Source: Octopus bimaculoides (taxonomy: Eukaryota). From it: a stretch of DNA of 46,102 nucleotides. A model generated the notes under the pieces. It ran no database searches, was not told where the DNA came from, and saw only the letters and a program-made list of their open reading frames with translations. Position 1 is the first letter of the stretch. The number at the start of each line of letters is the position of its first letter. The stretch is taken from NCBI RefSeq assembly GCF_001194135.2, contig NC_068981.1, positions 42,366,406 to 42,412,507 of the forward strand, given 5' to 3'. The translations under genes were made by a program, and so were the position numbers. This document shows positions 2,340 to 42,570 of the stretch, in pieces.

Positions 2340-2596
2340 GGTGGTGGTTGTCTACGCCTTAAACAGAGTTTGACCACCTCCTGCACCTACACCTTAGCCC
2401 TTTCATGGCGTCTGATGTGGCTTTTTAAACCAGACAGTGTTTTGAAAAAACACCCACACAGATTGCACCTCTGATTTGCACTACCAATACCTGCAAGTAA
2501 GTTCTGCTCATTGTGGATCCTAACATGTCTTTTAAGACCCCCATTGGATTTGCAAACCCTCTGGCACACACCACATTCAAACGTGTGCACAGACAT
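2340..2596 (-). mobile_element. Probable 3' end of an RTE-like LINE ORF encoding two C2H2 zinc fingers; truncated by the N-gap
   Basis: Translation SVHTFECGVCQRVCKSNGGLKRHVRIH-NEQNLLAGIGSANQ-RCNLCGCFFKTLSGLKSHIRRHERAKV*. It has two CxxC-x12-HxxxH motifs with a non-TGEKP linker, then a short 3' region ending in a simple repeat. A cellular C2H2 gene exon is not excluded. Confidence 0.55.
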
Positions 2597-16421: not shown

Positions 16422-17078
16422 CTCATAATGCTCACACACCAGTATGCATACATGCATGAAAGCTCATTCACAGAAACACACAGATGCATATACACTGTCT
16501 CATTTTAACGCTCCCTTTAGCTCATATTCACACAAGTATAAATATAGAACCTGTAACCTAGGAGAAAAACAGACTTGAAGCGAAGTAGGCTTAGAAGAAG
16601 CATATCATTGATGAGTAACTAATGCAGCGAAAGGACTTTGGTTGACCTAACGATTAATCAGACAATCGACTAGATAATTGGTTATAAGGTTGCATGAAAT
16701 AGAACTATGTTTATTACTCACACAATGATCCTCCCGAGCTACAACAAAACATTTTCCATTCAAATGCTAAGATTAATTCTTACATATTGTAAAATCTACT
16801 TTTACAATCTCGTGTCTTCTTTTTTGCAAATTATTTTAAACTATAGTGGTTAAATTCGTCTCGATTTCACCATTTTAAATTCAGTTTAGATAAGACCAGT
16901 ATCAGGTACTGTATGCTGTATGAATTGAAAGGGCTCTTGAGCAATAGAAGCGGTAAGAAATATTCGCTCTGAGTATGTGTCCGGATATGCCAGCAACTTA
17001 AATGTCCGGGATATGCCAGCAATTGTTTGTCCAGTTTTGCTTGAGAAATTTTTCTGTTACAGATTTCCCTCAGTTTTC

Positions 17079-17497
17079 CGATCGAGTTCTGTTAATGCTA
17101 AGCTTCTAAAAACCGTAGTTGAGGAAAATCCAAAGCGAACCTCACAAAAAATGGCTGAACAGTTAACTTTATGTCACACTTCGATCATAAAACATCTTCA
17201 AAAAGTAGGAAAAATATCTAAAATTGATCAGTGGGTCTCTTATAATCTGACTGCTTCTCAGTTTCAACAGAGTTGCCCTCTGCTCGTCATTGAGTTGTAG
17301 ATATGCTACGAAACCATCCCTGGGTAGATCACAAGGGACGAAAAAGTGGGTTCAATATCATATCCGATGAAACGACAATTGTGAGCCGCTGATGAAGGAA
17401 CAAAGTTCATCCGCAAGTCAGGACTTCACTCGAAATAAGTTATCCCCTGCGTTTGATGAGATATGAAGGATGTCGTTTGTTATTCAGTGCTAAAAAA
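17079..17497 (+). pseudogene. Mariner (Tc1/mariner) transposase relic: HTH region to first catalytic Asp
   Basis: RSSSVNAKLLKTVVEENPKRTSQKMAEQLTLCHTSIIKHLQKVGKISKIDQWVSYNLT matches the mariner HTH plus WVPHEL motif. After frameshifts come ITRDEKWV (ITGDEKW) and KSGLHSK*VIPCV**DMKDVVCYSVL (KPxLHPKKVMLCVWWD...). Confidence 0.88.
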
Positions 17498-37118: not shown

Positions 37119-37503
37119 GAAGGTGCATAGCATAGTGGACAGGGTAATCGGCTCACGATCGTAAAGTCGTCAGTTCGATTCCCGGCGACGCGTTGTGTCC
37201 TTGAGCAATGCACTTTATTTCTTGTTGCTCTAATCTACTCAGATGGCAAAAACGCGTTGTACCTGTCATTCAAAGGGCCAGCCTTATCAAAGGGCCAGCC
37301 TTATCAAAGGGCCAGCCTTATCAAAGGGCCAGCCTCATCAAAGGACCAACCTTCTGTGTCACGCTGACTCTCCCTGAGACCTACATTAAGGGAACGCATG
37401 TCTGTGGAGTACTCAACCACTTGCACGTTAATACCACGAGCAGACTGTCCCATTGATCGGATCAACAGGAAACCTCGTCGTCATCGTAAGTGACGGAGTG
37501 CCA
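37119..37503 (+). mobile_element. tRNA-derived CORE-like SINE, full length, with internal 17-bp tandem array
   Basis: Head gaaggtgcatagcatagtgg...cagttcgattcc, then gcgttgtgtccttgagcaatgcactttatttc; five copies of tcaaagggccagcctta at 37270-37353. Confidence 0.85.
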
Positions 37504-38744: not shown

Positions 38745-39605
38745 CAGTACCAAATATATTGATTTCAAATGTTTGCATAAGGCCAGCAATTTTTGGAGAC
38801 GAAGTAAGTCGATTACATCGACTCCTATGCTCTACTGGTACTCATTTTATCGACCCCGAAAGGTATGAATTTGAACGCAGAACGTAAAGACGGACGAAAT
38901 ACCGCTAAGTATTTTGTCCGGCATACTAACGATTCTATCAGCTCGCCGCCTTAGCTCCATAGAAATATTATTTTCTACTCTAGGCACAAGGCCATCGACC
39001 CCATTATGCAACTGGAACTTAATTTATCGACCCCGAAAGAATGAAAGGCAATGACGACCTCGGCGGAATTTGAACTCAGAAAGTAACGGCAGAAGAAATA
39101 CCGCTAAGTATTTCGCCCGGCGTGCTAACGATTCTGCCAGCTCACCGCCTTAGTACCATAGAAATATTCTTTTCTTCGCTAGGCACAAGGCCCGAAAGTT
39201 TGGTGATTAGATCGGCTCAGTATGCAACTGGTACTTAATTTATCGACCCTGAGAGGATGAAAGGCAAAGTCGACCTCGACGAAGTTCGAACACAGAACGT
39301 AAAGCCAGACGAAACGCCGCTAAACATTTCGCCGCCTGAGTACCATAGAAATACTTATTTCTTTATTGCCCACAGGTGGTAAACTTAGAGGGGACAAACA
39401 ATTTCAGTCAAATGGATTAAGTCGATTACATTGACTCCAGTGCGTAACTGGTACTTATTTAATCGACCCCTGAAAAAAATGAAAGACAAAGTCGACCTCG
39501 GCGGAATTTGTACTCAGAAAGTAACGACAGAAGAAATACCGCTCAGCATTTCGGCCGGCGTGCTAGCGATTCTGCCAGTTCACCGCCTAGGACAATAGAA
39601 ATATT
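38745..39605 (-). mobile_element. Head-to-tail array of four SINE copies separated by a recurrent ~18-bp spacer
   Basis: Units at about 38761-38951, 38970-39150, 39169-39337 and 39354-39587, each with tcgacccc.gaaa...gaatttgaactcagaa...accgctaag..tt...ccgcct. The tagtaccatagaaatatt-like spacer occurs five times. Confidence 0.92.
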
Positions 39606-41755: not shown

Positions 41756-41839
<84 letters not shown>

Positions 41840-41844
41840 CGTCT

Positions 41845-42200
41845 AACATCATCATTGTCTTCATCATCATTATTATCACAATCTCTTAACTGATGCTGGC
41901 AGTCTTTGAGATGCCACTTTAGACACCTTAGTAACCAGTCGTCGCCATTGGTCCGTCCAGTCCCTGATGCTGTCAAACCAGAATTTTCTCTGTCTGCCTC
42001 TGTTTTTCCTTCCCCCAACTGTGGCCTGAAGAATGGATTTGGGAAGGGAGTTGAGGGAAGTTGTGGCAGGATACATAAAAGTTTCGTTTTCCACCTGCGC
42101 AAGGAGTGGTTCCTCTCTGCCAGTGTAGTTGTTGACTTGCTGTCTGACAAAGCTGCTCATTTTGTGCTCTGTGTACAAGATGTGTAACTTCTTGAAATAC
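41845..42200 (-). mobile_element. RTE-clade LINE 3' end (C-terminal RT thumb region) running into (GAT)n/(GATA)n tail
   Basis: LHILYTEHKMSSFVRQQVNNYTGREEPLLAQV...NSLPKSILQATVGGRKNRGRQRKFWFDSIRDWT..WRRLV is the typical RTE ILQG.V.G.R.RGRQRK.W.D.I..WT ending. Confidence 0.85.
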
Positions 42201-42570
42201 ATTTTCGGTGTCATATTATAATGCAAAAATTTATATTATTGAACATATGGCGCCTTGCAAGGTATTTAGATATGAGTAGAAGTAATGGTGTTAGCCTAAG
42301 AAACCTGTGAAACAATAGAAGTACATGCAGTAGTAGCTAAGAAAGAGTAAGTGGTATATAAAATTAGAAGAGACACGAAAGAGTAATAATATAAAGCAGA
42401 GGCAATGAAAATAAGATGGGGAATTGAAGGGATAGTAGGAACTGAAGAAGAATACGGAGAATTAAAAAAGGAAGAATCAGTAAGATATATGTTCTATTAG
42501 TCTCCATATTACAAATTTTTGCTGAAATAAAGCAATAGTATACATGTGTGTGTATGCATGTGTGTGTGCA

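What the first reader, a model, noticed from the sequence alone, without database searches (positions are those of the whole stretch)
38745..39605. Four SINEs stacked head-to-tail with the same ~18-bp spacer five times: apparent serial insertion into one target site
Seen: spacers cagtaccaaatatatt (38745-38760), tagctccatagaaatatt (38952-38969), tagtaccatagaaatatt (39151-39168), gagtaccatagaaata (39338-39353) and taggacaatagaaatatt (39588-39605) bracket four same-orientation SINEs. The units carry three different 3' tails (gatttcaaat..ggccagcaat; ttttct..ctaggcacaaggcc twice; ttctttattgcccacagg). Simple tandem duplication should copy one tail, whereas repeated target-primed insertion with TSD formation gives exactly T-S-T-S-T-S-T-S-T. 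The tails begin with AT-rich bases that merge into the spacer end (aatatt), suggesting tail-target annealing. Inference: a retroposition hot spot that regenerates its own target, recording successive SINE subfamilies in order.
Basis: partly seen in the sequence, partly recalled or inferred. Interest (0 to 1): 0.7.

Follow-up and report, generated by a model that had tools for sequence, protein, structure and literature searches.

The report
Octopus SINE stack at one target
Four short retroposons (SINEs) of three different subfamilies sit head-to-tail, each flanked by a copy of the same 17-base target sequence, which is best explained by repeated insertion into one site that every insertion re-creates; the principle is already known and such head-to-tail stacks look common in octopus DNA.

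Summary
Window 38745-39605 holds four SINEs, all on the minus strand, bracketed by five copies of a 17-nt sequence (T = AATATTTCTATGGTACT in SINE sense). Four copies are near-perfect; the fifth is decayed.

I recovered about 112 kb of Octopus bimaculoides DNA plus short contigs for comparison. Three results follow:
- The units belong to three subfamilies that also exist as solitary copies elsewhere: A is type I, B and C are type III, D is type II. They never cluster with each other.
- The 11-12 nt core of T is found next to no other SINE. Only its first 5-6 nt (AATATT) match the SINE 3' end.
- Solitary copies have target-site duplications of 11-17 nt (mostly 16-17) that also begin with AATAT-like bases. 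T therefore looks like an ordinary TSD of this family.

The site is not unique. In 138 kb, 12 of 13 close SINE pairs are head-to-tail, against 0.9 close pairs expected by chance. The principle is already published (double insertion; clam SINE arrays).

No orthologous empty site could be examined. The insertion order is only suggested: A, D, C, B.

The parts
39589..39605 (-). T1, the upstream-most copy of the 17-nt target (AATATTTCTATTGTCCT). It is not preceded by any SINE.
   Evidence: p about 0.0005 against random 25-mers. nhmmer finds no SINE upstream of it.
39351..39587 (-). SINE D, full length, subfamily type II. Its tail reads ...TTGTTTGTCCCCTCTAAGTTTACCACCTGTGGGCAATAAAGAAATAAGTATT.
   Evidence: nhmmer model positions 1-218. 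It is 12.2% from the type II consensus against 20% from types I and III. It is sister to the solitary copy L014:40600-40897, and its nearest non-array copy is type II in 99% of bootstraps.
39339..39355 (-). T2 (AGTATTTCTATGGTACT)
39163..39336 (-). SINE C, subfamily type III, with a 29-nt internal deletion in the head. Its tail reads ...TTTCGGGCCTTGTGCCTAGCGAAGAAAAGAATATT.
   Evidence: It is 10.5% from the type III consensus against 18.6-19.8% from the others. It shares no private change with B (alignment).
39152..39168 (-). T3 (AATATTTCTATGGTACT), identical to the consensus of the five copies
38964..39151 (-). SINE B, full-length head, subfamily type III, with a deletion of about 35 nt before the tail. 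Its tail reads GGCCTTGTGCCTAGAGTAGAAAATAATATT.
   Evidence: It is 8.2% from the type III consensus against 12.5-13.4% from the others.
38953..38969 (-). T4 (AATATTTCTATGGAGCT)
38756..38952 (-). SINE A, full-length head, subfamily type I, with a 22-nt deletion across the B-box region. Its tail reads ...AAAAATTGCTGGCCTTATGCAAACATTTGAAATCAATAT. The last 5 nt are also the first 5 nt of T5.
   Evidence: It is 14.4% from the type I consensus against 20.6% and 25.4% from types III and II. It nests among type I copies.
38746..38760 (-). T5, the decayed downstream copy of the target (AATATATTTGGTACT), followed by unique flank GATGGGTGAAGG
   Evidence: local alignment AATAT.T-T-TGGTACT, p about 0.008.

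Best explanation
The array records at least three, and probably four, separate target-primed reverse transcription events at one genomic site.

The original site read ...GTGGTTATTT-AATATTTCTATGGTACT-GATGGGTG... on the minus strand. The partner LINE machinery nicks the bottom strand just before AATATT. The nicked DNA end pairs with the 3' end of the SINE RNA, which in all three subfamilies ends ...GAAA(N)(N)AATAT(T), and primes cDNA synthesis. The top strand is cut about 17 nt downstream. Each insertion is therefore flanked by two copies of the 17-nt target (T-S-T).

Later SINE RNAs of other subfamilies used one of the T copies again with the same stagger, giving T1-D-T2-C-T3-B-T4-A-T5.

Shown: the layout; the independent subfamily membership of the units; the locus-specific core of T; and the TSD habits of the family. 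Inferred: the nick positions, the annealing step, the partner LINE, and the order of events. The order is suggested as A first, then D into the upstream T, then C and B into the T between D and A. Using the clock quoted in PMC13282606, that corresponds to roughly 44 to 24 million years ago.
For: Subfamily membership
- Three tail and body types exist as solitary copies elsewhere. Type I is at window 41541, 13490, 10346 and 10744, at L005, L010 and L012, and at several places in L014 and L018. Type II is at L008, L006, L009 and L014:40600-40897. Type III is at seven or more copies in L014 and L018 and at L010b.
- The diagnostic differences lie in the body as well as the tail: GATAAAATAAG/GTTGAGTAC/GATGTAATCGACTTAC for type I, GATAAATTAAG/GTTGCATAC/GATCTAATCGACTGG for type III, and GATTAAATAAG/TTACGCAC for type II.
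- Each unit is nearest to its own subfamily consensus, and the units are never sisters.

The spacer is not SINE sequence
- TCTATGGTACT (at most 1 mismatch) and TTTCTATGGTACT (at most 2) lie next to no other SINE in 138 kb.
- Upstream flanks of 15 full-length heads are all different.

T looks like a normal TSD of this family
- Solitary copies have the TSD pairs AATATTCTTCTTATTA/AATATTCCTCTAATTA, GATATACAAAAGCA/GATATACGAAACCA, GAGTGTGCGAGGTTGT/GAGTGTGTGAGGTTGT, TATTATCACCTTCATTA/TATTGTTACCTTCATTA, AATACTTCTAATACTT/AATATTTTTAATATTT, TATTAAAGATGTA/TATTAAAGGTGTA and TATAAGGCCTA.
- These are 11-17 nt long, mostly 16-17. Each begins with bases that match the SINE 3' terminus.

Ages agree between units and flanks
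- Private changes in the flanking T copies track the age of the units. T5 is the most decayed and A is 14.4% diverged; T1 has 2 private changes and D is 12.2%; T2 and T4 have 2 each, with C at 10.5% and B at 8.2%.

The habit is general
- There are 13 close SINE pairs against 0.92 expected, and 12 of them are in the same orientation.
- 8 of 96 SINE-derived ORFs in a public protein library contain two SINE segments.
Against: - No orthologous locus or empty site could be examined.
- The subfamily consensuses rest on 4 to 14 copies from 138 kb, not on the whole genome.
- B and C are the same subfamily, so one of them could be a copy made by unequal exchange soon after insertion. Their lack of shared private changes argues against this but does not exclude it.
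- B and D share two private transversions in the head that about 20 other heads lack (rough chance 0.01). This hints at gene conversion or exchange inside the array.
- T5 is more decayed than the divergence of A predicts.
- The divergence ranking of the four units lies within about 1-2 standard errors.
- A second array (L014:65989-66626) has similar-looking spacers, but the similarity of their non-AATAT part is not significant (p = 0.24).
Confidence: 0.7

Rival explanations
1. Mixed origin. Three independent insertions (types I, II and III) occurred at the regenerated target, and the fourth unit (B or C) arose by unequal exchange between T copies or SINE bodies. Some gene conversion between neighbouring units may also have taken place.
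For: B and C share the type III tail. B and D share two private head transversions. Unequal recombination between TSDs is the published explanation for TSD1-(SINE-TSD1)n arrays in a clam (PMC11481361).
Against: B and C share none of their 11 and 13 private changes or indels. They are mutual nearest neighbours in 0.3% of bootstraps. Each is closer to solitary type III copies than to the other.
Confidence: 0.17
2. Pure tandem duplication. One SINE with its TSD was amplified by unequal crossing-over, and the four copies then diverged.
For: The T-S-T-S-T layout is also what unequal exchange between the two TSDs of one element produces. Satellite-like SINE arrays of that kind do exist nearby in the genome (L014:37219-37621).
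Against: The units carry three different tails and matching body diagnostics that exist as separate lineages elsewhere. The units never cluster together. Their truncations and indels are all private.
Confidence: 0.04
3. A single insertion of a concatemer. Reverse transcriptase switched template from one SINE RNA to the next, so the four units arrived together.
For: Direct tail-to-head junctions without any spacer, some with a 5'-truncated downstream unit, occur elsewhere (L014:4208/4218, 4430/4429, 66210/66207 and 69654). These could arise this way.
Against: Template switching cannot place a copy of locus-specific target DNA between every pair of units. The units also differ in divergence from their consensuses, 8% to 14%.
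Confidence: 0.03
4. The spacer is part of the element, either a 5' leader or a 3' extension, so the array is just SINEs abutting each other.
For: The first 5-6 nt of T (AATATT) do coincide with the SINE 3' terminus. One type III copy (L010b) even continues AATATTTCT.
Against: None of about 20 solitary copies has TCTATGGTACT after the tail or before the head. T1 stands without a SINE upstream of it, and T5 without one downstream.
Confidence: 0.02

Closest known systems
Tandem transposable-element dimers and arrays formed by double insertion at one target site, with the TSD kept in the junction (McGurk and Barbash, bioRxiv 10.1101/158386; Drosophila R1 array with 33-nt rDNA duplications)
   Same: The target-site duplication is preserved between the units and at both ends. 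The insertion does not consume its preferred target. A site preference plus TSD formation is enough to produce the pattern.
   Different: Here the elements are non-autonomous SINEs with RNA polymerase III-type promoter boxes. Four units come from three subfamilies, so the independence of the events is visible in the units themselves. There is no later satellite-like expansion.
TSD1-(SINE-TSD1)n arrays of tRNA-SINEs in the blood clam Scapharca broughtonii (PMC11481361)
   Same: A mollusc, tRNA-related SINEs, and an identical T-S-T-S-T layout.
   Different: In the clam the units are highly similar and truncated at the same tail position, and the arrays are ascribed to unequal recombination between TSDs. 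Here the units are different subfamilies carrying only private truncations.
RTE-related SINE insertion signature: the first TSD base correlates with the microsatellite-like 3' end of the RNA (Nishiyama and Ohshima 2018, PMC6007223)
   Same: The RNA 3' end appears to choose, or to be matched to, the start of the TSD (abstract).
   Different: In the octopus family the match is 4-6 nt (AATATT). The partner LINE and its clade were not identified here, and the T-stretch signature was not examined.
Alu insertion into the A-rich tails of resident Alu elements (from my own knowledge, not checked here)
   Same: The tail of a resident SINE offers the preferred priming sequence, which gives head-to-tail pairs.
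   Different: A different primer sequence (poly-A / TTTT|A), a different LINE (L1), and a different TSD make-up.
Octopus SINE families OK, OR1 and OR2 (Ohshima and Okada 1994, cited in PMC4824008)
   Same: tRNA-derived SINEs of octopus.

Membership tests
tRNA-derived SINE (short, non-autonomous, LINE-mobilised retroposon) | Internal RNA polymerase III promoter (A and B boxes) in a tRNA-like head | tested here: inconclusive
   By eye, TGGCAGAATCG matches the A-box consensus at 9 of 11 positions and GTTCAAATTCC is B-box-like. ARAGORN finds no tRNA and Rfam gives no hit.
tRNA-derived SINE (short, non-autonomous, LINE-mobilised retroposon) | Dispersed copies about 220 nt long, frequent 5' truncation, variable TSDs flanking each copy | tested here: met
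   49 hits in 138 kb, many of them 5'-truncated. Solitary copies have TSDs of 11-17 nt.
tRNA-derived SINE (short, non-autonomous, LINE-mobilised retroposon) | 3' tail shared with a partner LINE | tested here: inconclusive
   One candidate only: L014:58732-58885 carries the type III tail on non-SINE sequence. No LINE body was linked to it.
Serial (double or multiple) insertion array with preserved target | The same target sequence lies between all units and at both outer ends | tested here: met
   Five copies of T. Four have at most 2 mismatches. T5 is decayed but significant.
Serial (double or multiple) insertion array with preserved target | The units are independent copies, not descendants of one another | tested here: met
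   Three subfamilies. The units are never sisters. For B against C only the absence of shared private changes is available.
Serial (double or multiple) insertion array with preserved target | The element has an insertion-site preference that the TSD retains | tested here: met
   All 7 clear TSDs of solitary copies begin with bases that match the SINE 3' terminus (A)ATAT(T), and so does T.
Serial (double or multiple) insertion array with preserved target | Empty or partly filled site in relatives | not testable with these tools
   No octopus genome collection can be searched by DNA. Two metagenome scans found nothing. Exact ORF look-ups next to the array found nothing.
Tandem duplication array (unequal exchange between TSDs; clam type) | Units highly similar to each other and truncated at the same positions | tested here: not met
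   Unit-to-unit identity is 70-85%, no higher than to solitary copies. All indels are private.
Template-switch concatemer | Junctions made of element sequence only, with no target DNA between units | tested here: not met
   Every junction holds the locus-specific core TCTATGGTACT.
SINE superfamily with a conserved central domain (Deu/Nin-DC, CORE, Meta, V, Ceph) | Central domain matching the superfamily consensus | not tested
A text search for the central motif in the paper library found nothing relevant. Any resemblance to Nin-DC/Deu is from memory only.

The most novel reading that the evidence does not exclude
These octopus SINEs home to the 3' junction of resident copies. Every insertion leaves its own tail end (AATATT) joined to a regenerated target, so any resident SINE becomes a preferred landing pad for the next SINE RNA. 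Head-to-tail stacks of mixed subfamilies would then be a self-propagating, genome-wide feature, involving perhaps a quarter of copies, rather than a local accident. The stacks would also serve as dated layers of SINE activity.
Probability: 0.4. Interest if true: 0.6.

Novelty: new member of a known kind. Interest (0 to 1): 0.4.

Why it matters
The array is a clean natural example of a target site that survives its own use. Because the units are different subfamilies, independent insertion can be told apart from tandem duplication without population data.

If the tendency is genome-wide, it would help explain how SINEs, which make up roughly 8-12% of octopus genomes, pile up locally. It would supply seeds for satellite formation. 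It would also warn that 'tandem-like SINE' counts in molluscs mix two different processes. Finally, it gives a concrete handle on the unknown partner LINE: an AATATT priming match and a 16-17 nt stagger.

Tried and rejected
- Tandem Repeats Finder does not call the array. ARAGORN and Rfam give nothing for the heads.
- A sense-frame consensus peptide found no homologues.
- Two exact-pattern scans of metagenome contigs found no octopus DNA.
- Exact look-ups of two window ORFs flanking the array found nothing, so the orthologous locus could not be fetched.
- A LINE fragment query gave only 2-kb contigs without SINEs.
- What worked was the open antisense frame of the SINE, used as a protein query. 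This led to short contigs and to two O. bimaculoides chromosome segments.
- A first neighbour-joining tree that counted gaps as mismatches grouped truncated copies artificially. I replaced it with pairwise-deletion distances.
- I considered that the spacers of the second array (L014:65989-66626) repeat a TSD. The similarity outside AATAT is not significant (p = 0.24), so I do not rely on it.
- A text search of the paper library for the central SINE motif found nothing useful.
- Papers on octopus repeats that I checked do not mention SINE arrays.

Full report
**1. What is there**

Window 38745-39605 contains four copies of a SINE about 220 nt long. All four lie on the minus strand. In SINE sense, each unit starts with a tRNA-like head, (AA)GGCGGTGAGCTGGCAGAATCGTTAGCACGCCGG. 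It continues through a B-box-like GTTCAAATTCCGCCGAGGTCGAC and a conserved core, GGGGTCGATAAA(A/T)TAAGTACCAGTTG. It ends in a tail that finishes ...GAAA(N)(N)AATAT(T).

- T1: AATATTTCTATTGTCCT
- T2: AGTATTTCTATGGTACT
- T3: AATATTTCTATGGTACT
- T4: AATATTTCTATGGAGCT
- T5: AATATATTTGGTACT

The 18-mer with up to three mismatches occurs four times in the window, all in the array, against 0.14 expected. T5 is decayed but still similar (p about 0.008), and T1 gives p about 0.0005.

The units are 70-85% identical to each other and carry private indels. C has a 29-nt deletion in the head, A has a 22-nt deletion across the B-box region, and B has a deletion of about 35 nt before the tail. That divergence is why Tandem Repeats Finder misses the array.

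**2. Getting comparison material**

No octopus genome can be searched by DNA with these tools, and two metagenome scans were empty. The antisense strand of the SINE consensus has a fully open reading frame. I therefore used an alignment of such translations as a protein query. This returned 96 SINE-derived ORFs.

Looking up some of them gave three kinds of material:
- short Logan and ENA contigs, L005-L013;
- L014, a 76-kb segment of the O. bimaculoides assembly GCA_001194135.2;
- L018, a 36-kb segment of the same assembly.

Together with the window this makes 138 kb of non-N sequence holding 49 SINE hits.

**3. The units are three different subfamilies**

Solitary copies fall into three types that differ in body and tail:
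- Type I: ...GATAAAATAAG...GTTGAGTACTGG...GATGTAATCGACTTACCCC...AAATTGCTGGCCTTGTGCCAAAATTTGAAACCAATAT
- Type III: ...GATAAATTAAG...GTTGCATACTGG...GATCTAATCGACTGGCCCC...AAATTTCGGGCCTTGTGCCTAGAGTAGAAAAGAATAT
- Type II: ...GATTAAATAAG...TTACGCACTGG...TTAATC..TTTGA.TGT.CTTGTTTGTCC.CTCTATGTTTAGCC..CTGTGGGCAATAAAGAAATAA.TAT

I built a consensus for each type without using the array units. Divergence of each unit from the three consensuses:

| Unit | Type I | Type II | Type III |
|---|---|---|---|
| A | 14.4% | 25.4% | 20.6% |
| B | 12.5% | 13.4% | 8.2% |
| C | 18.6% | 19.8% | 10.5% |
| D | 20.1% | 12.2% | 20.5% |

In a neighbour-joining analysis with pairwise deletion, D is sister to the solitary type II copy L014:40600-40897. 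B and C sit separately inside type III, and A sits inside type I. No two array units are mutual nearest neighbours in more than 0.3% of bootstraps. B and C share none of their private substitutions or indels.

**4. The spacer is target DNA, not SINE**

The flanks upstream of 15 full-length heads are all different; only an AA that probably belongs to the element recurs. The 3' flanks of about 20 tails are all different beyond AATAT(T). TCTATGGTACT with at most one mismatch lies next to no other SINE in the 138 kb. The second refutation test (spacer belongs to the SINE consensus) is therefore not met for the 11-12 nt core. Only the first 5-6 nt, AATATT, coincide with the SINE 3' terminus.

**5. 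T looks exactly like a normal TSD of this family**

Solitary copies with both ends identifiable have direct repeats of 11-17 nt, mostly 16-17:

| Copy | Upstream repeat | Downstream repeat |
|---|---|---|
| L014:58539 | AATATTCTTCTTATTA | AATATTCCTCTAATTA |
| L014:12920 | GATATACAAAAGCA | GATATACGAAACCA |
| L018:1189 | GAGTGTGCGAGGTTGT | GAGTGTGTGAGGTTGT |
| L018:6525 | TATTATCACCTTCATTA | TATTGTTACCTTCATTA |
| L018:23611 | AATACTTCTAATACTT | AATATTTTTAATATTT |
| window 10346 | TATTAAAGATGTA | TATTAAAGGTGTA |
| L014:40897 | TATAAGGCCTA | TATAAGGCCTA |

In every case the pre-insertion target began with bases that match the last 3-6 nt of the SINE. This is the footprint expected if the nicked target DNA pairs with the RNA 3' end to prime reverse transcription. 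It parallels the link between TSD start and RNA 3' end reported for RTE-related SINEs (PMC6007223). T is 17 nt and starts with AATATT, so it fits this pattern. The family's modal stagger of 16-17 nt explains why the same length recurs at each re-use.

**6. Mechanism and order**

The most economical account is serial target-primed insertion. The first SINE entered AATATTTCTATGGTACT and duplicated it. Each copy of T kept the priming match, so later SINE RNAs of other subfamilies re-used one of the copies.

Divergences from consensus, together with the private changes in the T copies, suggest this order:
- A came first: it has the highest divergence, and T5 is the most decayed copy.
- D then entered the upstream T: T1 has two private changes.
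- C and then B entered the T between D and A: T2 and T4 have two private changes each, and T3 has none.

With the clock quoted for O. vulgaris repeats (JC 0.065 = 18 My, JC 0.2 = 56 My; PMC13282606), this corresponds to roughly 44, 37, 31 and 24 My. The differences are within sampling error, so the order is an inference.

**7. Rivals**

- Pure tandem duplication is contradicted by section 3.
- A template-switched concatemer cannot place locus-specific DNA between all the units.
- A mixed history remains possible, with three insertions plus one unequal exchange or some gene conversion. B and C are the same subfamily. B and D share two private head transversions, TATTTCTTCTG and GTTACTTTCTGA, that about 20 other heads lack (rough chance 0.01).
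- An assembly artefact is unlikely, because the units differ by 15-30%.

**8. The site is not unique**

In the 138 kb there are 13 SINE pairs separated by at most 60 nt, against 0.92 expected from random placement (maximum 6 in 2000 trials). Twelve of the 13 are in the same orientation. One of those twelve is a single SINE split by a deletion; leaving it out, 11 of 12 are in the same orientation (binomial p = 0.003).

Other stacks in the O. bimaculoides segments:
- L014:65989-66626: three type III units, 19%, 14% and 5% diverged, with the youngest downstream.
- L014:4040-4584: three units with direct junctions, one of them 5'-truncated.
- L014:69439-69751: two units.
- L014:37219-37621: a satellite-like array whose units share truncation points and private changes. 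This is a true tandem duplication and a useful contrast.

Eight of the 96 SINE-derived ORFs contain two SINE segments. Head-to-tail stacking is thus a family habit, as expected if every SINE 3' junction offers the priming sequence again.

**9. Relation to what is known**

The principle that an element with a site preference and a TSD preserves its target, and so forms tandems by double insertion, is published for Drosophila elements, including the R1 array with 33-nt duplications (10.1101/158386). TSD1-(SINE-TSD1)n arrays are described in a clam, but with near-identical units, and they are ascribed to unequal recombination (PMC11481361).

The present array is a new member of that known kind. 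Its merit is that three subfamilies make the independence of the events visible. I found no description of SINE stacks in the octopus papers I checked. I could not test whether types I to III equal the classical OK, OR1 or OR2 families, or to which central-domain superfamily they belong.

**10. Verdict**

The hot-spot idea should be widened to a family-wide habit, and the stratigraphic order is left open. Interest is moderate. The decisive missing piece is the orthologous locus in other octopods.

Noticed in passing
window 37150-37360 (+): A different tRNA-like SINE (B box GTTCGATTCCCGG, core GTGTCCTTGAGCAATGCACTTTATTTC). Its 3' end is a 17-nt tandem repeat, TCAAAGGGCCAGCCTTA x4.9.
   Followed up: no
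window 39099/39086 and 39537/39524 (-): Array units B (type III) and D (type II) share two private G-to-T changes in the head that none of about 20 other heads has. This may reflect gene conversion inside the array.
   Followed up: partly
L014:37219-37621 (+): Three SINE-like units truncated at the same 3' position and sharing private changes. This is a satellite-like tandem duplication and contrasts with the mixed-subfamily stack in the window.
   Followed up: partly
L014:65989-66626 (-): A stack of three type III SINEs of different ages (19%, 14% and 5% from consensus), with the youngest downstream. The spacers after units 1 and 3 look alike, but the similarity is not significant.
   Followed up: partly
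L014:69660-69700 (+): A telomere-like (TTAGGG)4 run has grown inside a 5'-truncated SINE head, at the motif GCTTAGCGG.
   Followed up: no
L014:58732-58885 (+): The last 40 nt or so of the type III tail are attached to non-SINE sequence. This could be the 3' end of the partner LINE.
   Followed up: partly
window 41827-42226 (-): C-terminal fragment of a LINE ORF2-like protein (...GRKNRGRQRKFWFDSIRDWT...). Only one distant homologue was found, on 2-kb Logan contigs.
   Followed up: partly
window 16977-17300 (+) and 2387-2590 (-): A mariner-type transposase fragment, and a C2H2 zinc-finger fragment next to an assembly gap. The window has 13 runs of N totalling 4.6 kb, so it comes from a draft assembly.
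   Followed up: no
window, L014 and L018 full-length SINE heads: 12 of 15 full-length heads are preceded by AA, often TAA, so the element probably starts AAGGCGG rather than GGCGG.
   Followed up: partly
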